NCBI RefSeq assembly: GCF_902459465.1
Contig: NC_047073.1
Coordinates: 1,860,001-1,924,000 of the forward strand
Direction of reading: 5' to 3'
DNA: 64,000 bases
Source: Asterias rubens
Lineage: Eukaryota
Of this stretch, positions 2,483 to 64,000 are shown piece by piece; the first letter of the stretch is position 1, and each line of letters starts with the position of its first letter. Below the pieces are notes generated by a model, which was given only the letters and a program-made list of their open reading frames with translations, made no database searches and had not been told where the DNA came from. The position numbers and the translations under genes are program-made.

Positions 2483-4483
2483 CTAGATTCCTCTGCGATG
2501 AATCTTTATCTTGAGTGTGGTGTATTTCTCCTTTGTGAGGAGTTTGATAGCGTGACTGTGAGTGGACATGGTCAAGTCTAGGCCATTCACCTGTCAAACA
2601 GGAAAGATCCACAAAATAAGAAAACTCGTTGCGTGCAAAATGAAAACCACTCTAACCCCAAAATACATCTTCTCTCTGTAATTGTTGCAGTTATGGCTGC
2701 TAAAATATAGGATTTAAAATGCCTCTAGCTACCGGCAATCTCAGTTGTCTGTACTTGGTAAGACACTGCTCTAGAATTGCAAACGGCATGAGTTTGAATC
2801 TCACCCGAGTGGATTTATGTTTTATATTATCATAAACTTACCTCCAGTATTTTGTCTCCAATAGCTAATCCTGAGAGTTCAGCAGGACTGCCTGGTTTCA
2901 CGACACTTACAAAAATACCCTGCAAAATGGAAAAAACAAATGGAATGAGTAATCTACGCTTGGGGGCGTATCAGTCGTAATGTGCTTGTATCTGCACGCA
3001 AATCGTGCGCATCAGTTCAATACGTTAGCTTAGGTGCATGAGGACAGCCCTGCGCTTTCTTGAGAAGAGGGTTTGAATTTCATGGTTGAGTGGTTAAGGG
3101 CATCAACTGGTGGTTAAGTCATCAGAGTGTTGGTTCAAATCCGGGTCGTGACCCACCTGTGTCCTTGAGCGAGATGCTTCCACCCAGATATATAAATGGG
3201 TACCTGCGAGGGTAGAGGTTTATAATGTGTTGCGTGTATGAAAAGGCCACTAGCGCCATACAGCAGCTCTGTACTCCCCAGGGAGGTGAGCAAGATCAAA
3301 GGAATGTTATTGGCCTAAGGACCAGGGCACTAATGTAAAGTGCATCGAGACGTTGTTGTGAAATGCGCTTTGTAGTTATTATTAATATTTTTCTTACCGC
3401 ATCTCCTGGTACGAAAGGGTTCTTGGATTTATCCTGATCGATTCCTCCGGCTATACTTAGCCCAAGACCAGCTCCGGGAATCTTCTTTAATGTTATGTCA
3501 ATCTGAAAATGTCAAGAGACAAAAATATTATTAGTACTTAAAAATCTTGTAATTCAAAACCTGATGACATCATCATGATGTCACTGTCCAAGTTTCCTCC
3601 TAGAACTACGAGGTTCGTTCTGCTATCGTCTCTAGACAGTAGCAGAATGAACTCCATAGTTCTAGGAGTATGTTCAAAATCAAGTGCCGTCCTCATGGTC
3701 CAAATGCCAAGGTTCAAGGTTCAATTTGAGTTACTCACACTATACTATTAGTGAGCCAATATTATTGGCGTAATTCTATATTTATAGAAAACAAATTCAA
3801 GTAAAAAAGTATGAAAGATTTAACTAAAAGTGAAAGAATGTTCAAGTAATTTTGTCACTTGATCCCCCCCTCCCCCCGAGTCTCAATTGAAACACTATAT
3901 ACAAAATATAGACTAAAAAGGTACAAAAAACATCCCCATTCCAAGTTTTTCTTTTGATTTATTCCCAAAGACTAATTTAAATTTCAACTTGACTCACCAA
4001 ATAAATCTAAATCACATTGGCAATGTCAGTTGTCACAACAATAATAATATATTAATAAAGGGGGTGTTGTGGTTAAACAAGTAAATAATGAAGTCAATAA
4101 TAACCTTGAGTGGTTTGTCATGTTTGTTTACATTTGAATGACAAGTTGTAACATACAGTTTGGTTTGTTGTTGATACAAAACCAAAATATTAAACTTTCT
4201 GAATACTCGTTCATCAGAAAATTAAAAGATAAATAATAAACAGCGCCCTCTACAGTTGATTGATTTAATCTTGGGCGCATCAAAAAAGTTCTGGGCGGTA
4301 GAAACGAACAGCAAATCTTCATCTTTAGACACTCATTTGGGGTAGAAAAACAAAAAATTTGCTACAGCCATAGACCTGGAATGGTTTTATCGGGTGATCA
4401 TCTTTAAAATTCTGACAATATCTTTCAAACGTCATAAAAACAACACTTACACACGGTATTCCACCACCGCCCATGGACGCCAT
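2483..4483 (-). CDS. TAX1BP3: Tax1-binding protein 3 (TIP-1)-like single-PDZ protein, 4 coding exons, 107 aa
   Basis: Exons 4483-4451, 3502-3398, 2919-2842, 2590-2483; all GT-AG, all phase 0. Translation: MASMGGGGIPC/IDITLKKIPGAGLGLSIAGGIDQDKSKNPFVPGDA/GIFVSVVKPGSPAELSGLAIGDKILE/VNGLDLTMSTHSHAIKLLTKEKYTTLKIKIHRRGI*. The GGIDQDxSxNPF insertion is the TIP-1 hallmark, and the introns before GIFV and VNG match my recollection of TAX1BP3. Confidence 0.8.
3082..3385 (+). mobile_element. tRNA-headed SINE with a Meta-like central domain
   Basis: TGGTTGAGTGGTTAAGG head, GGTTCAAATCC B box, GTGTCCTTGAGC...CCACCCAGATATATAAATGGGTACC, then a tail ending in an ATT-rich stretch. Confidence 0.6.
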
Positions 4484-4999: not shown

Positions 5000-17190
<12,191 letters not shown>

Positions 17191-23804: not shown

Positions 23805-26800
23805 TCACCTCTTCTCCGCTTCTTCCAACAACCGATCAAAAACTGCCGGTTCTACGGCAACCAGTTTTAACATCTCTAACTCTATTGGATGCATATGGCC
23901 TGTGATGATCAATGAGTGAAGCGGTTCACCGAGGTCGACCGTTGCCAGTTGCTGAAGGGTTCCAGCTGCCATTTGTTGCGACTCGGATCCGACGCGTGCG
24001 ACTCCTACGCAGATGGTGTCTTCACTCAGTGCTGAAAGAGTAAACAAAAATCAGTTAATGGCACTAGACACCTTTGGTACTTTACTTTTCAAAGACCAGT
24101 ATTTTCACTTGTTGTGTATCCCAAATATGTATAAAATACAAAATCTTTCTCACCTAGTTTTTCTTGACTCTCCGTTGTTCTCTTCCTCTCAACGATATTA
24201 ATGAGTTGAGAAGCTGCTTGGCTGACCGTCATGTAACGAGGTGGTTCATAAATCTTCCTCCCTCTGATGATGTAAAGTTAAAATTAAATAATATTTATTT
24301 TCCGTTTTCTAATATTCATCCTCAAAGATATAAGTAATTCATTACCCAATTGTGTGGGTTTCTGAAATTTTCAACAGCAGCTCTATACAAGTTTCAACAG
24401 GCCTATGGGTCGCAACAGTGCTGGTCACCTTTCAGGGTCCCTTGATTTCATGACCAGAAAGTTACTACAGTAGTTTTTACATTTGAAGACAGGTCTCACT
24501 ACACAATTTTCTTTCAGTGACACCTTGAGTTTTTCACTAATCAGGAGAGACTGCTGAGTTCAAATATGAATTTGTACTGCTGTTATCTACCATGTCTACT
24601 GGTTCTGAGTAGACTTTAAATCAGGAGTCTACCGAGATCAAAGGGCCCAATTTCATGAAAAATTTAAGCACACAAATTCTGCTTAGCAGAAACTGGTTAC
24701 CAGCCAAAATTCCATAATGTTTGCAATGTTTTGACTGCCGCCTCACTCATTGTTGCTTAGCATAGACATTTACAAAGCAGTAAGCAGTAATTCATGCTTA
24801 ACAGCTAAATAAAATAAACCCAAGAACTTGTCCTGCTGTTATCTGCTGCTGAGTAGATTTGGAATCGAGAAAAAAATCTAGTTTTGATGACAACAACTTT
24901 TCCTTCTGTAGATTGGGAAATCCTGGAGTGACTTGGTCCTTGCGAGAACAAGTCCTGCTTTTCATCTAACTCCTGAGAAGTGAGATATTGCGGTCTCAAT
25001 TTATTATTATTATTAAGCCAAGTTACCTCATCATGTTCTCAATGGATTGTTCCTTGACCTTAATGTCAAGAAGACACAGCGTGTGTAAACCCATGGCTCT
25101 GTTTCGTGCAATCTTATCGTAGTAGCTGTCGGGGGTCCACGTGTCCGTCCAGAACACAATGGAGATTGTCTCACCATAGTTGTACAACTACAAAGGGAAG
25201 AAACAATAGAGAGTTTGTAAAGTACAACTTTAAGGCACTGGACACTATGGACCAAAGGAGTTGAAGTCATTAAGCCGCCATCTTAGTATTTCTCCTTGGT
25301 AAAGAGCATCCTAAACCATGTGTATAATTAAACAGAACAGCAACAACTCACTAAGTTATAGGAGTCTGCAATATGCAAATAAGTTCCCATGAACACTAAT
25401 TATGCAAATTTCATTCATACCTGTAGACCGCAGCAGCCAACCGCATTCATAATTGATGCACTGTGAATCACTCTAGCCCTGTACTCTACACTATGCAATC
25501 AATGAATAGTAATTATGCACATTTCATTCATACCTGTAGACCGCAGCAGCCAATCGCATTCATAATTGATGCATTGTGAATCACCCTGTACTCTATCCCT
25601 TCTTGTTTTGCCCTCAGGGCTAAATCTGTGTGAGTTGTTGCACTGAATGAAAGAAAAAAGTACAAGTATAAATGAGGTCGGAAAATCACATGAGCATTAC
25701 ATAGACTCGGGAGCTTACACTTACAGGCCTGCAACTTTATCTAAGAAGGCTAGATCATTTTTTTTTTGAAGGGTAGTTTCATTGGATAATCTTAAAATTG
25801 TTTAGAAAACTGCAGCACCTCAGCAAGTAATATTTTAAGGGAATCTTTCTATCATCATCACTATCGTAAAACCAAGTAAGTTTAAATGTAAGTTTTGTGT
25901 CAAAACAAAAAGTACCCAAACCCTTTATACATTGATTGTTTTGAATGCACCATAAAACTACGAGGGAGCGAAAGTCTGATTGCCTGCGCCTATCTTACCC
26001 AAACGGATCTCCAACCACGAGGAATGCGATGTCTTCAGTTTTTGCGTCTCTGAAAAGTTCATCTGACTGTTGTTCCACCATATCCCTATCGGCCAGAATC
26101 AGATCCCGGCCGTAAAACTCCTCCTAGTCAAATATTGAAGTTTAAAGTTAATGTCATGGATTGTTCTTTGTCATTTAATGCTGAGTTATTGCTAGCCCTA
26201 TAAATACGACCCATCCACTTCATATCCTTAGCCCCAGCGCCAATGCAAAGCGCCAGTATTTTTGTGCCCAAATGTAAACATTTAAAAAACAATGAGTACA
26301 GAGCCCGAGTTACCGTGTCTAAATAAAATATGTGAATGTTTCTTCAAACAACTGAAAATGAATATTGAATAAACATAGGCGTTATTAAACCAATGTTTGT
26401 ATGAGACTGAGAGAGATGCTGTTGCTAGCTTGGCGTTTATATCTCTTTGAGGGAATTTGCTGAGTTCCCTTGATGGGAAGATCATTCAAACAAACAAACA
26501 AATAAACAAACAAACAAACAAACGAAAGTGAATGTTTCTTCAAACAACTGAAATTCTAAACAGCATTTTCTGAGAAAACAGCAAACAATTTCACTGTATT
26601 TTCAAAGGGCTCCGCAACATTCACAAACTGACACCAACCCTAAGAATTTTATTGTTGATTTTTGGTAATATGAATACTTAAATGACGAGTGGCTTGGCTG
26701 CCTGACAATTACTCCTAGAACTATGAGGTTTCGTTTCGATATCGACGATAGCAGAACAAAAACCTCATAGTTCTAGGAGTAAATTTGTAATGCACAAAAA

Positions 26801-49820: not shown

Positions 49821-50070
49821 AAATACGTTGTAAATGCCAAAACAATTTTCGTATACGTACACAAACCAATTGTTGATAGCTCACAATGTCGCAAAACATG
49901 CATTTGTTTTGGCAACATGGTTTTAAGACACTGGGCATCTTTGGTAAATACGTTGTAAATGCTAAAACAATTTTCGTATACGTACACAAACCAATTGTTG
50001 ATAGCTCACAATGTCGCAAAACATGCATTTGTTTTGGCAAAATGGTTTTAAGACACTGGGCATCTTTGGT
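49821..50070. repeat. Two-copy 125-bp tandem duplication including the left end of a family A MITE
   Basis: 49821-49945 and 49946-50070 are nearly identical; each ends in TTAAGACACTGGGCATCTTTGGT(AA). Confidence 0.9.
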
Positions 50071-50439
50071 AATTGTCAAAGACCAGTATTCTCACTTTGT
50101 GCAAATCTGTGCAAAATTGGACTCAATTGGTCACTCATCGTAGTTGGAAGAGAATAATGAAAGAAAAAACACCAATGTTGCACACTTTTGTGTGCTTTTG
50201 TCAGGTTAAGGACTTTTAAGTGAGAAATTACATCTTTCTAAAAATACGTTACTTCAGAGGGCGTCGTTTCTTACAATTTGTTATACTATCAACAGCTCGA
50301 TTGCTCGTTACCAAGTAAGTTTTCATGCTAACAATATTGAGTATCAACAGTGCCCAAATACACGTACACCGTTTAATGATGAAACTGCAAAAATGTCACA
50401 CATAGTTTCTGTTCATTCGCACATTCGAGAAAGACGGAG

Positions 50440-53829: not shown

Positions 53830-57042
<3,213 letters not shown>

Positions 57043-57489: not shown

Positions 57490-57804
57490 TGCAGATTAGG
57501 GTAACCGTGTACAAATAAGATTAGTAAGATTTAAAAAAATACTTTGCATGACCACAGGCATCTGTTACATGTTCAATAAAATCTGCATAATTGCTTGTAA
57601 ACATTAGTCAATCAAATTGATAGAGCGGATGGTGCAATCAAATTGATAGAGCGGATGGTGCAGATTAGGGTAACCGTGTACAAATAAGATTAGTAAGATT
57701 TTAAAAAATACTTTGCATGACCACAGGCATCTGTTACATGTTCAATAAAATCTGCATAATTGCTTGTAAACATTAGTCAATCAAATTGATAGAGCGGATG
57801 GTGC
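57490..57804. repeat. 169-bp tandem duplication, with an internal 26-bp unit present three times, overlapping the receptor stop codon
   Basis: 57490-57635 matches 57659-57804. AATCAAATTGATAGAGCGGATGGTGC occurs at 57610, 57636 and 57779. Confidence 0.9.
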
Positions 57805-60800
57805 AATGATAGGTACATTGGTTGATATGGTGTCAGCAATAACATCAGAGGTGACATCAACGTCAGGATTGTCTGGTCCTGTAGAAAGTTCTTCCATGCC
57901 TGTCCGCACTACTGATAAAACAAATGAAAACAAACATTTGAAAACAAACTTTACTGAAGTTGTCAACAGAAGAGGATATGCAAAACATATTTGAAATGAA
58001 TTTAATATTTGATCTCCCTAGTTTATATGCTTTAATACATACCCATTGTTCGTGTCTGCGAACAACAAAATCGAGGGACCAAAATAATCTCGAGAGAACA
58101 AATCAATTTCGAGGGAACAAAATAACGCATTACATTGACAAAAGTAAAAGTATTTTGAGATAACGAAATTATATTTTGAGGGGAAGGAACAATATTTAAT
58201 ATTGTTTTTACATTTAAGTTTCAAAAAAAGGTGTTACCTTCACATTATCAAAACTGTTTAATCCCCAATGATTTAAATCTTGTGAAAATGATTATGACAA
58301 AGATCACTCTGGAACTTTCGATTTTAAGGAATTTCATGGGAACTTTGTCATCAACACTGCAGGGAGATGAATAGGTAGAGTTTCGTGGTAATATGAAGAT
58401 AATAGCAGCTATACATTTTGTCAAGGCAATTATTTAAAGACCTAAATTCAAATTAAAGTCTGAAATTTCTCATCCTCTCACACAAAACTGAAAAATATTT
58501 TTTTCTGAAATGAAAGTTTACAGAGATGTAAATGATGACATACCATTTACAGCGTTTAGATGTCTAAGCCTCTTCTTCCACCTGTCAAAGGTACGGAAAA
58601 TAAACAACAAACACAAAACTAACCTTTCACTAAGCAAAGAACAGTTGCACTTATTAGTTCACCAAATCATTAAGAAGGGTTTATCACATGCGCCGCAGCC
58701 AAAAGCCGAGGTCTACGGAGCTCTTTCGAAAAGATTAATAATTTTTACCCCTCGAAGTTATAAGTATTCCTTTCCCTCGACAAAATTATTACGTTTCCTT
58801 AAAATGTAATTTTGTTGCCCTGACATCATTCCGCTCCCCAAATTCATTGCAGAACCTCGAAAAATGTTTTTCCCCTCGAAATATTATTGCTAGGAAACCA
58901 AATATATAATGATACCTCACCATACAATGCCTCAAATCCTATATCCTGTTTATTCTGATGTTTTTTATTTCAATTCTTTCCCCTATTTTTGTTTAAGGAA
59001 CATCAGAGAATTTCACTAAGTTGAGCGTTTAATAACTACCTTATTATGACGACCACAGCAACTATAATACCAATCAGGACAATCAACACCAATGGAACCA
59101 CAACAGCAGCTACCGATGGGCTTGCACTTTGTGGCACTGACAAACAAACATTTCTCAATTATTACCTTATTATGACGACCACAGCAACCCCAATACCAAT
59201 CAGGACAATCAACACCAATGGAACCACAACAGCAGCTACCGGTGGGCTTGCACTTTGTGGCACTGACAAACAAACATTACTCAATTGAGACTTTAATAAC
59301 TACCTTATTATGACGATCACAGCAACCCCAATACCAATCAGGACAATCAACACCAATGGAACCACAACAGCAGCTACCGGTGGGCTTGCACTTTGTGGCA
59401 CTGACAAACAAACATTTACTCAATTGAGACTTTAATAACTACCTTATTATGAAGACCACAGCAACCCCAATACCAATCAGGACAATCAGCATCAATGGAA
59501 CCACAACAGCAGCTACCGGTGGGCTTGCACTTTGTGGCACTGACAAACAAACATTTACTCAATTGAGACTTTAATAACTACCTTATTATGAAGACCACAG
59601 CAACCCCAATACCAATCAGGACAATCAACACCAATGGAACCACAACAGCAGCTACCGGTGGGCTTGCACTTTGTGGCACTGCCAAACAAACATTTCTCAA
59701 TTATTACCTTATTATGAAGACCACAGCAACCCCAATACCAATCAGGACAATCAACACCAATGGAACCACAACAGCAGCTACCGATGGGCTTGCACTTTGT
59801 GGCACTGACAAACAAACATTTCTCAATTATTACCTTATTATGACGACCACAGCAACCCCAATACCAATCAGGACAATCAGCATCAATGGAACCACAACAG
59901 CAGCTACCGGTGGGCTTGCACTTTGTGGCACTGACAAACAAACATTTCTCAATTATTACCTTATTATGACGACCACAGCAACCCCAATACCAATCAGGAC
60001 AATCAACACCAATGGAACCACAACAGCAGCTACCGATGGGCTTGCACTTTGTGGCACTGCACGTTTCGGTACTGCCAACCAAACAAATAATCATATCAAG
60101 ATGTGAATTGATGTTAAAGCTTACATCTTCGAAATCAAGAGAAAAATATGTATACTGTAATTGTTTGACTGCAAGTTTGCTCAGCCGTTAACATTGTGTT
60201 TAGAATGTGTTCTGAGGAAGCGTTTAAACGGTGATGTTCAGTACACGAACGGTATCTAAACACCAGTGTTTAAGTTTGATGTATAGAGGCACTGTGCCTT
60301 TACTAAGAAAATGCACCAAAGTTAATTGCTTTTCAACACAACTCATCATGAGCCCTATACACTGTTAAGTTGTTAACCTATCAAAACACTCGTTTGTACA
60401 GTGTAGGCCATGTCGGAATGGGCGGCTATCAGCTAGGGCTACAGCTGCATCCACGCCGCCATGCGTTGGGGGTATAGGACGTCCTTAGCAACACCATTAA
60501 CAACAGCCGTAGCAGTAGCTTTAGAAGACAATTCGGACACGGCCGGAGTTTAAAGATTCCGGGTAAAAGAGAAATGTTACAATACGATCAATGTGGAGGT
60601 ATTGAGCAGTAACTTACCTTGAACTCTGAGCGGCTTACTCCATTTAACGGCAAAAGTCTAAGAAAAAAATAAGAGAGAAATAGCAACACATTGTTAAGCT
60701 GTTATCATTCTTACATATATATTCAACTTCCAACGCATGTTTACATGCTTTTAATACATAAAACACTTCTTTTAAAATTAATATGACAGTGATTGAGTAG

Positions 60801-63800
60801 TGTTGGGCCTGAAAAGAACTGGACGTTAGCGACTCAACGTTTCGATCAGTATACCTGATTGTCTTCAGAAGACTGTTGTTTATAAGCGACTTCCAGAAAT
60901 TGAAGGCAAGCGTGTCAGAGACACACACATCTGCGCATGGTGTGTTGTTGCAAATGGTCAATTTGTCACTGTTAAAATAATAACACGAGAGATAAAATTC
61001 AAGGCTCACCGATTGAGAAATCCTACTGACTGATCCCAGATAGATGTCATACTGAGTGTTGCTTTCCAGGGGTTTGTTTCCCTCTGTTTCTCCGTCACCC
61101 ACAGTGAATGTTGCAGGAAGGTCCTTCTTAGGTAATTCTGCAGCTACATAATCAAGAGTTGGTACAGTGGATCGTTGGTACCTTGATCCCCTGGTGTCCC
61201 TTCTATTGACTGTCTTAACCTGCTGTACACCAACTTGCATGCCTCTAAGAAATACAAAAAATGTTCTTGAGTAGAATTTTTAAATTTCAGTTTTCATTGT
61301 TTCTGTCACAATGTTGACATTTTCTTGGGAAATTTTTTTCTTTACCAAACAGATGCAATGTTAAAAACCAAAAACGGTGATTCACTACACATTGCATTAA
61401 TCAACGAGAAAAAAATGAACGTTGGCGCATATAATTGTAACTATTACTTTTAAGATAACAACGTTGATTGGTTGGCATACGATAACAGGAATATTTACGG
61501 CGATTCATGATTTATTCTGGAGTTTTTATCAGTCAAAATGTCATTGAATCGACCTTCGACTTTTGCGCAAAATTCCTCTTTGGAATGTACAATTAATTAT
61601 GTTAATGGTTACAATGACATCAGGTGGAAAATTACAAACTTAGAAAACCCCATATAAAAGTGAGGGTAGATACTTTGGGTTTCTCATCTCAATCTATTGA
61701 GCGCATCACAAAACTGAAATTGAACTTTAGTGTCCTCTTTAAATGTCAAGTGGTATTTTAAAATAAAATCACTAACATGGCTTAGTCACTTTGGACCCCA
61801 GACCCCCCGCCCCACCCCAAACGCTGATGAAACGTGCACTGTGAAACGTGCGTTTAGCAAATGGCTCCTATGAAGTTTTTTGTCTAGAATTTTTCAGGTT
61901 AATAGCATTGAACGCTGTTGGTAATTACGCAAAATAATTATTAGCATAAAACCTTACACTGTGAGAAACGGCTCCCTCTGAAGTAATGTAGTTTTCGAGA
62001 AAGAAGTAATTTTCCACGAATTTGATTTCAAGACCTGAAGGCACACAACTTCGTGTGACAAGGGAGTTTTTCTTTGATGATTATCTCGCAACATCGACGA
62101 CCGATTGAGGTCAAAATTTCACAGGTTTGTTATTTTGTGTATACATGTATGTTGAGATACACCAAGTGATAAGACTAGTCTTTGACAATTACCAATTGTG
62201 TCCAGTGTCTTTAAACATCCTATGCATAATTTCAACTCACGTAATGTACTCCGACGAGGGTGGAAGATTCAAAGCAATAGTGACTGTGGAAGAAGTCAAA
62301 TCTGAGATATCTTTTTGGGAAAGCTGAGTTGGAGCAGGAAGATCTGTAAAGCAAAAGAAACTGTGTACCTTAGGGGAGGTTCTCTTTCCAAAACAAAACC
62401 ATAAGAGAACATCTCAAAATTCAAAAGCGGTTCTGGCAGTCCAGTAAATTGCTGACGTATGTCTACAAGCATGTTTTTGCGCCTAGAATGTGCCCAACTT
62501 TTGAGACAGTCCCAAACAAGAATATGTTACAATTAGGCTATGAAGTAACAATAAAAGACAATAATTTTTTATTAATTTTTATTTTTTATTCTAATTTTAA
62601 TTTTAGTGACTTGGATTTATTGTTAACAAAACTTTGTATAAAGTAAAATATCTGTCAATTTAGTTCAACGAACTAGTTATTGAGTGCTATGTCTCACAAT
62701 ACCTGTCTGAACTTCAGTAAATGCCTCTAATGTTGCTTTATCTCCAACACCAGCACTGTTGAAACCTTGTAGTCGGAAATCATATTTTGTTGATGGTTCT
62801 AAACCACTGATGTTGCTGTGCATATCTGATGGTTCTATATCAACCGACTGAAATGAGCTGTTTGGACTAAAGTTGGTGTCATAAGGTTTTTCCAGCACCC
62901 TGTATGAGAGCTGTTCATTGTATGTAAATGGGAGATAAAAGGACACTGACAATTTTCGCAAAGTTTTACACTTAAATGAGGTTTGAAATAATGAAATGTG
63001 GAATAATTGAAAACATTGGAAAAATTGTTTTGATTTAAAACCATCTGCTATGAAGACTCACTCTGTATTTGGTTATCAAACCATTTCTTTGACCACACGG
63101 TATTTCACTCCAGCTCAATGCCACACTATGCTTCGCTGTTGAAGTAGTCTTGAATTCTGTTGGAGGTCCAGTTGGCTCTTAAATAAAAACACAAAACAGC
63201 AAGTTTACTTTTTACTTCCGTATGCTTAATAGATGCGATCTGTCATGGTGATGATAAGACAGTATAAGAATCACTCACTGTAATAAAAGGGTTCCAAATC
63301 TGAACACTTCTTCATCATCTTTGCTCTACACTGATGACATTCGCAAACCTATACTACAGGTCAAATTGTAGTCAATTTGAAGGATCCATTGATTGGTTTC
63401 CTCTCCAAAGATGTCACACTTTGTCTGTAATTTTACCTTAAATCCCTCATTTCTTCATTAAAAGTAATTTTCTTACAGCATAACAGACCATTATTTTAAA
63501 GCACTTGTAGTCCAATTCAAAAGATTAACATTTCGTTTAAAAAAAATGCCCACCGAAAAACTAGCTCAGTTCACTGACTAACATATGCTTCTTGAAATCA
63601 GTGAGTAACAACATTTTGAAGTTAATTTTGAAATAATGATGTTTCCATCTTTTTTGAACAACTTGAGTTATAGATTCCAGTATCAGGAAAAGTTTTACTG
63701 GAGAAGCAAATCAAACGAGGAAAAGTTCTTTAGATGAAAGCAAACAATAGGTATTATCTTCACCAGGCATACACAAATAAGTATGAATCCAGTTCAAAGT

Positions 63801-64000
63801 CACAGTTCCCACCCTTATACAGATACTCTCCTACCAGGAACTTACCCTTCTCAGGTGTGGTATGTTCGATATAAATGCTCTCCTGAAATTCCCCAAGTCC
63901 TGCCTCATTCCTGGCAAGAACACGAACCTTGTAGATTGAATTGGACTCTAAAGATGAATCAGAATATGGAAAAGGAGACTGTCTCTCAGTTGTGTTGTGT
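57781..64000 (-). CDS. FN3-repeat single-pass receptor with an RPTP-like membrane-proximal module and no phosphatase domain (5' partial)
   Basis: Exons >64000-63846, 63177-63062, 62910-62703, 62343-62241, 61244-61010, 60657-60618, TM exon 60071-59960, 58581-58544, 57911-57781; phases chain correctly. FN3 signatures: LESNSIYKVRVLARNEAGLG, WSEIPCGQRNGLITKY, GLEPSTKYDFRLQGFNSAGVG. YVAAELP..FTVGDG..NKPL...YDIYL resembles the juxtamembrane module of LAR/type IIB RPTPs. The TM is followed by RWKKR and a tail of about 55 aa. Confidence 0.85.
59040..60071 (-). repeat. Tandem array of 8 copies of the transmembrane exon (126/138/139-nt units)
   Basis: Copies at 59960-60071 (full 112-nt exon), 59834-59930, 59708-59804, 59582-59678, 59443-59539, 59304-59400, 59166-59262, 59040-59136 (97 nt each). 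Each is preceded by TTTGTTTG(T/G)CAG-like acceptor sequence and followed by GTAATA or GTAGTT. Confidence 0.95.
60831..60874 (-). ncRNA. Penelope-type minimal hammerhead ribozyme motif
   Basis: Minus strand reads GTCTT-CTGAAGA-C-AATCAG(GTATA)CTGATC-GAAA-CG-TT-GAGTC: complete core, 5-bp stem II, imperfect stem I, palindromic AACGTT in place of stem III. Confidence 0.55.

What the first reader, a model, noticed from the sequence alone, without database searches (positions are those of the whole stretch)
59040..60071. Eight-copy transmembrane-exon array: candidate mutually exclusive TM cassette
Seen in sequence: the TM exon of the FN3 receptor is repeated 8 times. Each copy has an AG acceptor giving phase 1 and a GT donor giving phase 2, so any single copy fits in frame between exons 60657-60618 and 58581-58544. 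No copy has a stop or indel, while the spacers vary in length (29,29,29,42,42,41,29 nt). All 8 peptides differ by shuffled variants of [S/P]VAAVVVPL[V/M]LIVLIGI[G/I]VAV[V/I][V/F]IIR. Established knowledge: spacers this short are generally below the minimum for splicing adjacent exons together, and close spacing enforces mutual exclusivity in alpha-tropomyosin exons 2/3. Inference: this may be a young, Dscam-like diversification system acting on the membrane anchor, where G-to-I and V-to-F changes could alter GxxxG-like dimerisation or protease cleavage. The copies are nearly identical, so the lack of disabling mutations is weak evidence of selection.
Basis: partly seen in the sequence, partly recalled or inferred. 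Interest (0 to 1): 0.85.

Follow-up and report, generated by a model that had tools for sequence, protein, structure and literature searches.

The report
Eight-copy membrane-anchor exon repeat, starfish
A starfish receptor gene that has lost its enzyme half carries eight near-identical, splice-ready copies of its membrane-anchor exon; the array is real and only one copy can be used per working message, but it looks like a young repeat expansion, not a proven diversity system.

Summary
On the minus strand at 60071-59040 there are eight head-to-tail copies of a 97-nt transmembrane exon (copy 1 is 112 nt from its native acceptor). The spacers are 29,29,29,42,42,41,29 nt. Every copy has AG/GT and fits the frame, and the eight peptides all differ.

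The context changes the reading. The window is very probably Asterias rubens LR699103.1:1,860,001-1,924,000. The gene belongs to a clustered family of receptor tyrosine phosphatases. Compared with its positional ortholog in A. amurensis, it has lost about 13.9 kb holding both phosphatase domains, and the breakpoint lies inside a coding exon.

The repeat units carry the intron flanks of a different paralog, which itself has two copies with an identical 41-nt spacer. All six A. amurensis loci I sampled have one copy. Five of the six variant events recycle paralog variants. The same family holds other repeat arrays of exon fragments that cannot work as cassettes.

Exactly one copy gives an open frame; none, or any allowed multiple, gives a premature stop. 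I found no RNA evidence, no catalogued protein for this gene, and no family isoform that differs in the anchor.

Verdict: a young exon-bearing minisatellite, structurally forced to one copy per message; selected diversification is unproven and unlikely (about 10%). The scan had already noted the two-copy sister (s1-151062).

The parts
63846..64000 (-). Partial FN3 exon (e1) of the receptor; the gene continues beyond the window end
   Evidence: Open frame and GT donor read; tblastn to family proteins at 82-88% identity; weak Pfam fn3 hit
63062..63177 (-). FN3 exon e2
   Evidence: AG/GT boundaries read; tblastn
62703..62910 (-). FN3 exon e3
   Evidence: Pfam fn3 E=1e-4; boundaries; tblastn
62241..62343 (-). 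Exon e4, start of the membrane-proximal FN3-like domain
   Evidence: Boundaries; tblastn
61010..61244 (-). Exon e5, membrane-proximal FN3 (PTPRU-type)
   Evidence: Pfam PF23144 Fn3_PTPRU E=3e-4; used as query, result
60618..60657 (-). Exon e6 (TFAVKWSKPLRVQ), ends in phase 1; the constitutive exon upstream of the array
59960..60071 (-). Transmembrane exon copy 1: 112 nt from the native acceptor at 60071, with a 97-nt core from 60056. Its upstream flank is of the gene's own (L002) type
59834..59930 (-). Transmembrane exon copy 2 (P, M variant)
59708..59804 (-). Transmembrane exon copy 3 (S, F variant)
59582..59678 (-). Transmembrane exon copy 4 (P, F variant)
59443..59539 (-). Transmembrane exon copy 5 (P, M, F variant); 99% identical to copy 1 of the paralog locus L004
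59304..59400 (-). Transmembrane exon copy 6 (P, I variant); followed by a 41-nt spacer identical to the L004 spacer
59166..59262 (-). Transmembrane exon copy 7 (consensus-like)
59040..59136 (-). Transmembrane exon copy 8 (S, G-to-I via GGG to ATA). Its 3' part and downstream flank are of the gene's own (L002) type
58544..58581 (-). Exon e8 (stop-transfer WKKRLRHLNAVN), phase 2 to phase 1
57781..57911 (-). Last coding exon e9 (juxtamembrane tail), cut short by the deletion junction at about 57793/57792 and ending ...IIAPSA|LSI plus stop
57490..57807 (-). 169-nt x1.9 tandem duplication (with a nested 26-nt x2.1) that starts at the deletion junction and repeats it

Best explanation
This is a young, species-specific, exon-bearing minisatellite. 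A 126/139-nt unit, made of a complete 97-nt transmembrane exon plus 29-42 nt of fused intron ends, has been amplified to eight copies. The host gene is the A. rubens positional ortholog of A. amurensis XP_071799509.1, a Tie-like Ig/EGF + FN3 + TM + double-PTP receptor, and it has lost its whole phosphatase half. The unit did not arise from this gene's own flanks. It was built in, or shared with, the paralog at L004, apparently by unequal recombination between short AATTGAG-type repeats on either side of that paralog's exon. It was then placed into this gene by gene conversion or unequal exchange and expanded by further unequal crossing-over, which also shuffled pre-existing paralog variants among the copies. 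For the transcript, the geometry alone dictates the outcome. Neighbouring copies are too close to be spliced to each other, and 97 is not a multiple of 3, so only mRNAs with exactly one copy keep the frame and all others should be lost to nonsense-mediated decay. Which copy is taken is most likely unregulated, with copy 1 (native acceptor) favoured. I infer that the array is neutral or mildly harmful to productive splicing, and that it is tolerated because the gene is truncated. Shown here: the array, the frames, the flank origins, the deletion, the copy numbers in relatives. Inferred: the mechanism of origin, the splicing behaviour, the lack of selection.
For: Family and species: the best hits are Asterias 'receptor-type tyrosine-protein phosphatase T-like' proteins. 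Window coordinates follow from the L004 repeat at 23953-24239, which is record 1,578,372-1,578,658 and lies exactly 281,343 before a window start of 1,860,001. Orthology and truncation: blastn is collinear with L002 except that L002 24923-38844 is missing. The junction was read base by base inside exon e9, and no PTP or kinase motif occurs anywhere in the window. Origin of the unit: the last 27 nt of the 29-nt spacer equal the upstream flank of L004 copy 1 (27/27). The 41-nt spacer is identical to the L004 spacer, while the outer flanks of copies 1 and 8 match L002. Copy number: six A. amurensis loci each have one copy. In A. rubens, L004 has two, L005 has a 92-nt x2 duplication that covers only the first 45 nt of the exon, and the window has eight. 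Recombination: the four-gamete test fails for the V/F site, and five of six variant events have both states in paralogs. Background process: a 112-nt array (40 nt of intron plus the first 72 nt of an Ig exon, no donor, some copies frameshifted) sits in every sampled family locus except L008, in both species, at 4.5-13 copies. A 61-nt array is also present in all of them, and there are several fresh two-copy duplications in the window itself. No selection signal: 5 of 6 events being nonsynonymous fits neutrality (p=0.43) and being stop-free is expected (0.92-0.94). No isoform evidence.
Against: The ectodomain exons inside the window are intact and look constrained. dN/dS against the ortholog is 0.33 (bootstrap 0.20-0.60), and changes private to the window lineage are 11 nonsynonymous to 10 synonymous (p=0.012 against neutrality). 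The gene may therefore still make a useful tail-less receptor. A. amurensis annotates an 827-residue tail-less product of a paralog (P0031). Every copy keeps native-grade splice sites. All five single-base variants fall on first codon positions and give conservative hydrophobic swaps (post hoc p about 0.012), though borrowing from functional paralogs explains this. No RNA data could be consulted, so use of several copies is not excluded.
Confidence: 0.65

Rival explanations
1. A functioning mutually exclusive cassette. The truncated receptor is expressed, several of the eight copies are each chosen singly, and the resulting anchors (S/P, V/M, V/F, V/I, G/I, with or without PKRAV) differ in dimerisation, sorting or cleavage and are kept by selection.
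For: Exactly one copy is required for an open frame, and all 46 allowed multi-copy choices, as well as skipping all copies, give premature stops. The spacers of 29-42 nt match the 'too short to excise' class proven in C. elegans (PMC4165533). All copies have AG/GT, and their donors and acceptor regions are identical to ones used in annotated paralogs. The eight peptides are distinct. The ectodomain appears constrained. A tail-less family product is annotated in A. amurensis. Alternative transmembrane exons are a known device in Drosophila Dscam1 exon 17 (abstract of PMC1397879; the transmembrane role is from my own knowledge).
Against: The array is absent from the ortholog and from five other A. 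amurensis paralogs, so it has no evolutionary depth. The variants are recycled from paralogs. There is no sign of constraint on the copies beyond chance. The two-copy paralog has one annotated model, which uses copy 1 only. No family isoform differs in the transmembrane exon. No protein for this gene turned up in three database searches. Candidate docking/selector pairing is at chance level, 23 of 300 shuffles. Seven equally good decoy exons would be expected to lower productive splicing, not to be regulated.
Confidence: 0.1
2. The whole locus is a dead, unexpressed partial gene copy. After the deletion removed the phosphatase domains, the 3' UTR and the polyadenylation site, the gene is a pseudogene and the array is a neutral repeat with no consequence for any transcript.
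For: A 13.9-kb deletion has its junction inside a coding exon. The tail exons show 11 nonsynonymous to 3 synonymous differences from the ortholog. No catalogued protein was found for the gene, although the neighbouring paralogs from the same A. rubens annotation were found. The largest array sits in the only truncated member seen.
Against: None of the eight exons in the window has a stop or frameshift. The window-lineage ectodomain changes are 11N:10S, significantly fewer nonsynonymous than neutral (p=0.012). My searches left a length gap of 229-455 residues in which a partial model could hide. The 5' part of the gene lies outside the window and was not examined.
Confidence: 0.2
3. Assembly artefact: the true genome has one or two copies and the assembler inflated the repeat.
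For: Only one assembly was seen and no raw reads could be consulted. Tandem repeats are error-prone in assemblies.
Against: The eight copies are all different and carry two spacer types in a non-periodic order, which is not what a spurious duplication gives. The array is only about 1 kb. Related duplications occur independently at two other loci of the same assembly, and other arrays of the family are present in both species' assemblies.
Confidence: 0.05

Closest known systems
C. elegans mutually exclusive exon clusters with intervening introns too short to excise (egl-15 5A/5B, 14 nt; let-2 9/10, 30 nt; Kuroyanagi et al. 2014, PMC4165533)
   Same: Homologous tandem exons are separated by spacers below the minimal intron size, and nonsense-mediated decay backs up exons whose length is not 3n. 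Here the spacers are 29-42 nt and the exon is 97 nt.
   Different: Those clusters have two to four exons, are experimentally shown to be used, and are regulated. Here there are eight near-identical copies, no RNA evidence, no conservation even in the sister species, and non-adjacent copies are not sterically excluded.
Drosophila Dscam1 exon 17 (two alternative transmembrane exons) and the exon 4/6/9 arrays
   Same: An Ig/FN3 cell-surface receptor in which a tandem exon array can swap the membrane-spanning segment (abstract of PMC1397879; the transmembrane role of exon 17 is from my own knowledge).
   Different: The Dscam variants are old, diverged, conserved across insects and selected through docking/selector RNA pairing. 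Here the copies differ by 1-7 nt, the best intron-spacer complementarity (10 nt) is at chance level, and the gene is a phosphatase-family member that has lost its catalytic half.
Alpha-tropomyosin exons 2/3 steric exclusion (Smith and Nadal-Ginard 1989; own knowledge, also summarised in PMC4165533)
   Same: The donor of one exon lies too close to the branch site and acceptor of the next for the two to be spliced together.
   Different: That is a single ancient pair with regulated tissue choice; this is an eight-unit young array.
Intragenic minisatellites of the same gene family (the 112-nt and 61-nt arrays in all sampled paralogs; the 92-nt x2 partial transmembrane-exon duplication in L005)
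   Same: Same genes, same unit size range, same head-to-tail structure with concerted evolution, and copy number that differs between paralogs and species.
   Different: Those units hold only an exon fragment without a donor, or no exon at all, and some copies are frameshifted. The window's unit happens to span a whole exon with both splice sites, which gives it coding potential.

Membership tests
Mutually exclusive exon cluster derived from tandem exon duplication | Adjacent homologous exons of equal length and identical splice phase | tested here: met
   Eight copies of 97 nt, phase 1 in and phase 2 out
Mutually exclusive exon cluster derived from tandem exon duplication | Every copy has usable splice sites | tested here: met
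   AG and GT are present at all copies. Both donor types (GTAATA, GTAGTT) and the 27-nt acceptor region are identical to those of annotated paralog exons. Actual use was not shown.
Mutually exclusive exon cluster derived from tandem exon duplication | A mechanism that prevents joint inclusion (steric, frame/NMD, RNA pairing or incompatible spliceosomes) | tested here: met
   The 29-42-nt spacers are below the roughly 40-nt limit cited for C. elegans. All 46 non-adjacent multi-copy combinations, and skipping all copies, give premature stops. Steric exclusion covers adjacent copies only.
Mutually exclusive exon cluster derived from tandem exon duplication | Transcripts contain exactly one copy, and more than one copy is used | not testable with these tools
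   No RNA data were reachable. Three protein searches found no product of this gene. The two-copy paralog has one model, using copy 1.
Mutually exclusive exon cluster derived from tandem exon duplication | Duplicates retained across species or under purifying or diversifying selection | tested here: not met
   There is a single copy in all six A. amurensis loci, including the positional ortholog. Substitution pattern and lack of stops are as expected by chance.
Dscam-type docking site / selector sequence control | Conserved intronic element complementary to a sequence next to each variant exon, beyond chance | tested here: not met
   The best pairing is 10 nt (60578-60564 against the 29-nt spacers). 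An equal or longer match occurs in 23 of 300 dinucleotide-preserving shuffles, duplex energy is unremarkable, and the element is absent from the ortholog and paralogs.
Minisatellite (tandem array evolving by unequal exchange) | Head-to-tail units of tens to low hundreds of bases with high identity | tested here: met
   Period 126/139, 7.8 copies, 93% matches
Minisatellite (tandem array evolving by unequal exchange) | Mosaic variant pattern and unit-length variants that indicate recombination among units | tested here: met
   Four-gamete violations; two spacer types in a non-periodic order; variants shared with paralogs
Minisatellite (tandem array evolving by unequal exchange) | Copy number differs between close relatives or individuals | tested here: met
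   8, 2 and 1 copies among paralogs and between the two Asterias species. Variation among individuals was not testable.
Receptor-type protein tyrosine phosphatase (Asterias 'PTPRT-like', Tie-like ectodomain) | FN3-containing ectodomain plus a single transmembrane segment, homologous to family members | tested here: met
   Pfam fn3 and Fn3_PTPRU hits; 82-95% identity per exon to family proteins
Receptor-type protein tyrosine phosphatase (Asterias 'PTPRT-like', Tie-like ectodomain) | Cytoplasmic PTP catalytic domain(s) | tested here: not met
   No HCxAGxGR, KNRY or WPD motif in any frame of the window. The homologous 13.9 kb is deleted.

The most novel reading that the evidence does not exclude
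A. rubens has very recently turned a phosphatase-less, Tie-like/FN3 receptor into a carrier of up to eight alternative membrane anchors. Choice among them would be enforced purely by geometry (spacers too short to splice, an exon length that is not 3n, and nonsense-mediated decay). That would be a mutually exclusive cluster caught at birth, before any regulatory RNA elements evolved, with anchor variants that tune dimerisation or sorting.
Probability: 0.08. Interest if true: 0.7.

Novelty: new member of a known kind. Interest (0 to 1): 0.35.

Why it matters
Tandem exon duplication has long been proposed as the source of mutually exclusive splicing, but nearly all known clusters are ancient, so the first steps are inferred rather than observed. 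Here one gene family offers a natural series: one copy in six A. amurensis genes, two copies in one A. rubens gene, a partial duplication in another, and eight copies in a truncated one. The unit's junctions can still be read, and the family contains built-in negative controls in the form of arrays of exon fragments. If public A. rubens RNA-seq shows several copies each spliced in singly, that would demonstrate that geometry alone can produce isoform diversity in one mutational step. If only copy 1 is used, or the gene is silent, the locus instead shows how exon-bearing repeats accumulate where constraint has been relaxed. It would also warn gene annotators, since one sister locus is already split into two gene models at such a duplication.

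Tried and rejected
1. Docking/selector RNA pairing. A 10-nt perfect complement (13 of 15) joins the upstream intron (60578-60564) and every 29-nt spacer. It carries three window-specific substitutions relative to the ortholog. Even so, matches of this length occur in 23 of 300 dinucleotide-preserving shuffles and the duplex energy is ordinary (an earlier version of the script timed out). I rejected it as evidence.

2. Selection on the copies. The lack of stops or indels, the nonsynonymous excess and the codon-position bias were each tested. Only the first-position bias is nominally unusual (post hoc p about 0.012), and borrowing of variants from functional paralogs explains it.

3. Transcript evidence through the protein collections. 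Three searches and cluster listings gave no product of this gene and no spliced fragment covering the transmembrane exon. The short ENA hits are genomic read-through ORFs.

4. Isoforms of family members. All annotated differences are one-residue acceptor shifts, a small juxtamembrane insert, or C-terminal truncations. None lies in the transmembrane exon.

5. A phosphatase or kinase domain further downstream in the window: none.

6. A first dN/dS attempt through tblastn codon maps lost short exons. I replaced it with exon-by-exon nucleotide alignment.

7. The 5' part of the gene lies beyond the window end and could not be fetched.
Full report
**1. The observation**

Reading the minus strand of 58400-60800 and running Tandem Repeats Finder (59037-60059, period 126, 7.8 copies, 93% matches) confirms a head-to-tail array.
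- A script that anchors on the exon start gives eight copies of exactly 97 nt, separated by 29, 29, 29, 42, 42, 41 and 29 nt.
- Every copy is preceded by AG and followed by GT.
- With the G left over from exon 60657-60618 and the G supplied by exon 58581-58544, each copy reads as a juxtamembrane stretch plus a 24-residue hydrophobic segment. All eight peptides differ.
- Copy 1 has a second acceptor 15 nt upstream (60071), which is pyrimidine-rich and native. It gives a 112-nt exon with five more residues.

**2. What the gene is**

The upstream exons in the window encode FN3 domains. The membrane-proximal one gives a weak hit to the PTPRU-type FN3 model.
- A full-library HMMER search with exon 61243-61010 found a 1459-residue Asterias amurensis protein with Ig/EGF/FN3, a transmembrane segment and two phosphatase domains.
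- A word-indexed search found a family of 'receptor-type tyrosine-protein phosphatase T-like' paralogs clustered on one chromosome in A. amurensis and A. rubens.
- None is identical to the window's exons.
- The A. rubens locus L004 (LR699103.1:1,554,420-1,598,628) holds a 287-nt repeat at 23953-24239. Its end is record position 1,578,658. An earlier scan note places a 287-letter 'duplicated transmembrane exon with a 41-nt spacer' 281,343 letters before this window, which gives a window start of exactly 1,860,001.

I therefore take the window to be A. rubens LR699103.1:1,860,001-1,924,000. This is inferred, not looked up.

**3. The gene is truncated**

blastn of the window against the fetched loci shows collinearity with L002, the gene of XP_071799509.1 in A. 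amurensis. The collinearity runs from the FN3 exons through the transmembrane exon, exon e8 and the juxtamembrane exon e9. It then jumps from L002 24923 to L002 38844.
- The junction, read base by base, lies inside exon e9. The two sequences agree up to ...CCATCCGCT and the window then continues with sequence from 13.9 kb further on in L002.
- The reading frame ends three codons later.
- All phosphatase exons and the original 3' end are gone, and no PTP or kinase signature exists in any frame of the window.
- The order of the three A. rubens loci (L005, L004, window) matches that of their A. amurensis counterparts (L001/L008, L003, L002). This supports positional orthology.
- The junction itself has since been tandemly duplicated (169 nt x1.9 and 26 nt x2.1).

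**4. Is the remnant still constrained?**

- Exon-by-exon alignment gives dN/dS = 0.33 (bootstrap 0.20-0.60) for 283 ectodomain codons against the ortholog. This is similar to the values against paralogs.
- I polarised the differences with four paralogs. Changes private to the window lineage are 11 nonsynonymous to 10 synonymous. That is fewer nonsynonymous than neutral expectation (77%; p=0.012).
- The tail exons show 11 nonsynonymous to 3 synonymous differences.

So either the ectodomain has been kept functional for most of its history or the truncation is recent. A tail-less 827-residue product of a paralog is annotated in A. amurensis (P0031), so phosphatase-less forms are not foreign to the family. 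On the other hand, I found no catalogued protein for this gene in three searches that did return its A. rubens neighbours. Lengths of 229-455 residues were not covered.

**5. Where the repeat unit came from**

Comparing each copy with its flanks and with the single exons of the paralogs gives four facts.
- The outer flanks of the array (upstream of copy 1, downstream of copy 8) are of the gene's own L002 type. So is the ATA codon in the 3' part of copy 8.
- The last 27 nt of the 29-nt spacer are identical to the native upstream flank of L004 copy 1.
- The 42/41-nt spacer is the first 28 nt or so of the L004-type downstream intron fused to the last 13 nt or so of its upstream intron. The join falls at an AATTGAG-type motif present on both sides of that exon.
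- The 41-nt version is identical to the spacer between the two L004 copies.

The unit was therefore made in, or shared with, the L004-type paralog and placed into this gene. This fits the patchwork exon identities that point to frequent gene conversion in the family. Among the copies, the V/F site violates the four-gamete rule with two other sites. For five of the six variant events both states occur in paralogs, and only the GTC (V) state at exon position 87 is private to the window.

**6. Copy number in relatives, and controls**

- All six A. amurensis loci sampled (L001, L002, L003, L006, L007, L008) have a single transmembrane exon.
- In A. rubens, L004 has two copies.
- L005 has a 92-nt x2, 100%-identical duplication that covers 47 nt of intron and only the first 45 nt of the exon. 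The public annotation splits that gene into a 176-residue and a 680-residue model exactly there.
- Every sampled family locus except L008, in both species, carries a 112-nt array of 4.5-13 units. Each unit is 40 nt of intron plus the first 72 nt of an Ig-domain exon. The units have no donor, and some copies carry one-base deletions.
- A 61-nt intronic array recurs in all of them.
- The window itself has fresh two-copy duplications of 125, 40, 26 and 169 nt.

The process that makes such arrays therefore ignores exon boundaries. The transmembrane unit is the one case in which a whole exon with both splice sites was captured.

**7. What the array must do to a transcript**

I computed the products from window coordinates.
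- Any single copy gives an open frame to the same stop.
- Skipping all copies shifts the frame and stops after eight codons.
- All 21 + 20 + 5 combinations of non-adjacent copies stop prematurely.
- Retaining a spacer stops immediately, because the donors read AGG TAA or AGG TAG.
- Adjacent copies are 29-42 nt apart. In C. elegans, intervening introns of 14 and 30 nt in proven mutually exclusive clusters are never excised, and about 40 nt is taken as the minimum (PMC4165533). The minimal intron size in sea stars is not known to me.

Productive mRNA therefore needs exactly one copy, with nonsense-mediated decay expected to clear the rest (inferred). Nothing in the sequence suggests regulated choice.
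- The spacers are almost identical.
- The only notable intron-spacer complementarity is at chance level.
- The one relevant annotation, the two-copy paralog, uses its first copy only.
- No family isoform differs in this exon.

**8. Selection on the copies**

- Only 3 of 291 possible single-base changes create a stop, so 6-8 changes stay stop-free with probability 0.92-0.94.
- Five nonsynonymous events out of six is what neutrality predicts (p=0.43).
- The five single-base variants all sit on first codon positions (post hoc p about 0.012). In a hydrophobic segment this yields V/I/M/F/L swaps. Because these states pre-exist in functional paralogs, they were filtered there and not necessarily here.

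**9. Verdict**

The array is real, and its geometry is that of a mutually exclusive cluster with too-short spacers. Its youth, its borrowed variants, its truncated host gene, the non-functional sister arrays and the lack of any isoform evidence make a neutral or mildly harmful exon-bearing minisatellite the best reading (about 0.65). The rivals are a fully dead locus (0.2), a functional cassette (0.1) and an assembly artefact (0.05). RNA junction data for A. rubens would settle the matter and exist publicly, but they could not be reached with these tools.

Noticed in passing
L004:14658-15784; L005:2100-3228 and 3744-4414; L001:13264-13766 and 14562-15090; L002:11638-12386; L003:11012-11734; L006:3272-4723; L007:3321-4063: A 112-nt minisatellite (40 nt of intron end with a good acceptor, plus the first 72 nt of an Ig-domain exon) sits at the same place in seven of the eight sampled paralog loci of both Asterias species, at 4.5-13 copies. 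The last unit is the real exon start, and some units are frameshifted. An array of decoy acceptors kept in position across paralogs and species is odd and unexplained.
   Followed up: partly
L005:14149-14335: A 92-nt x2, 100%-identical duplication covers the intron end and the first 45 nt of the transmembrane exon of another A. rubens paralog. The public annotation splits this gene into a 176-residue FN3 fragment (LOC117297671) and a 680-residue phosphatase-only protein exactly here.
   Followed up: partly
window 57781-57807, and L002:24923 / 38844: Clean junction of a roughly 13.9-kb deletion inside the juxtamembrane coding exon, removing both phosphatase domains. The junction sequence was afterwards tandemly duplicated (169 nt x1.9 at 57490-57807; 26 nt x2.1 at 57609-57662).
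   Followed up: yes
L003:10001-19611: A. amurensis annotates an 827-residue 'uncharacterized protein' (XP_071799918.1) that overlaps a full-length family gene. It ends by reading through the donor after the stop-transfer exon, which makes it a natural tail-less, phosphatase-less receptor form.
   Followed up: no
L003:25451-26357; L004:31224-31914; L005:22376-23073; shorter in L001, L002, L006, L007, L008: A 61/62-nt intronic minisatellite recurs in the phosphatase half of every paralog, with 2 to 15 copies.
   Followed up: no
window 49821-50072 and 54886-54965: Fresh two-copy tandem duplications (125 nt at 98% identity; 40 nt at 100%) in intergenic sequence. Together with the others, they suggest that short tandem duplication is a common mutation type in this genome.
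   Followed up: no
window 60564-60578: An intron element 40 nt downstream of the e6 donor has a perfect 10-nt complement to every 29-nt spacer and carries three window-specific substitutions relative to the ortholog. Statistically it is at chance level (23 of 300 shuffles).
   Followed up: yes
window 60057-60071: Only copy 1 can encode the extra PKRAV segment (a dibasic KR just outside the membrane). A. amurensis P0020 has the same PKRAV and P0002 has a related LKRAV, but the other seven paralogs do not, so the two exon lengths (112 and 97 nt) are both native states in the family.
   Followed up: partly
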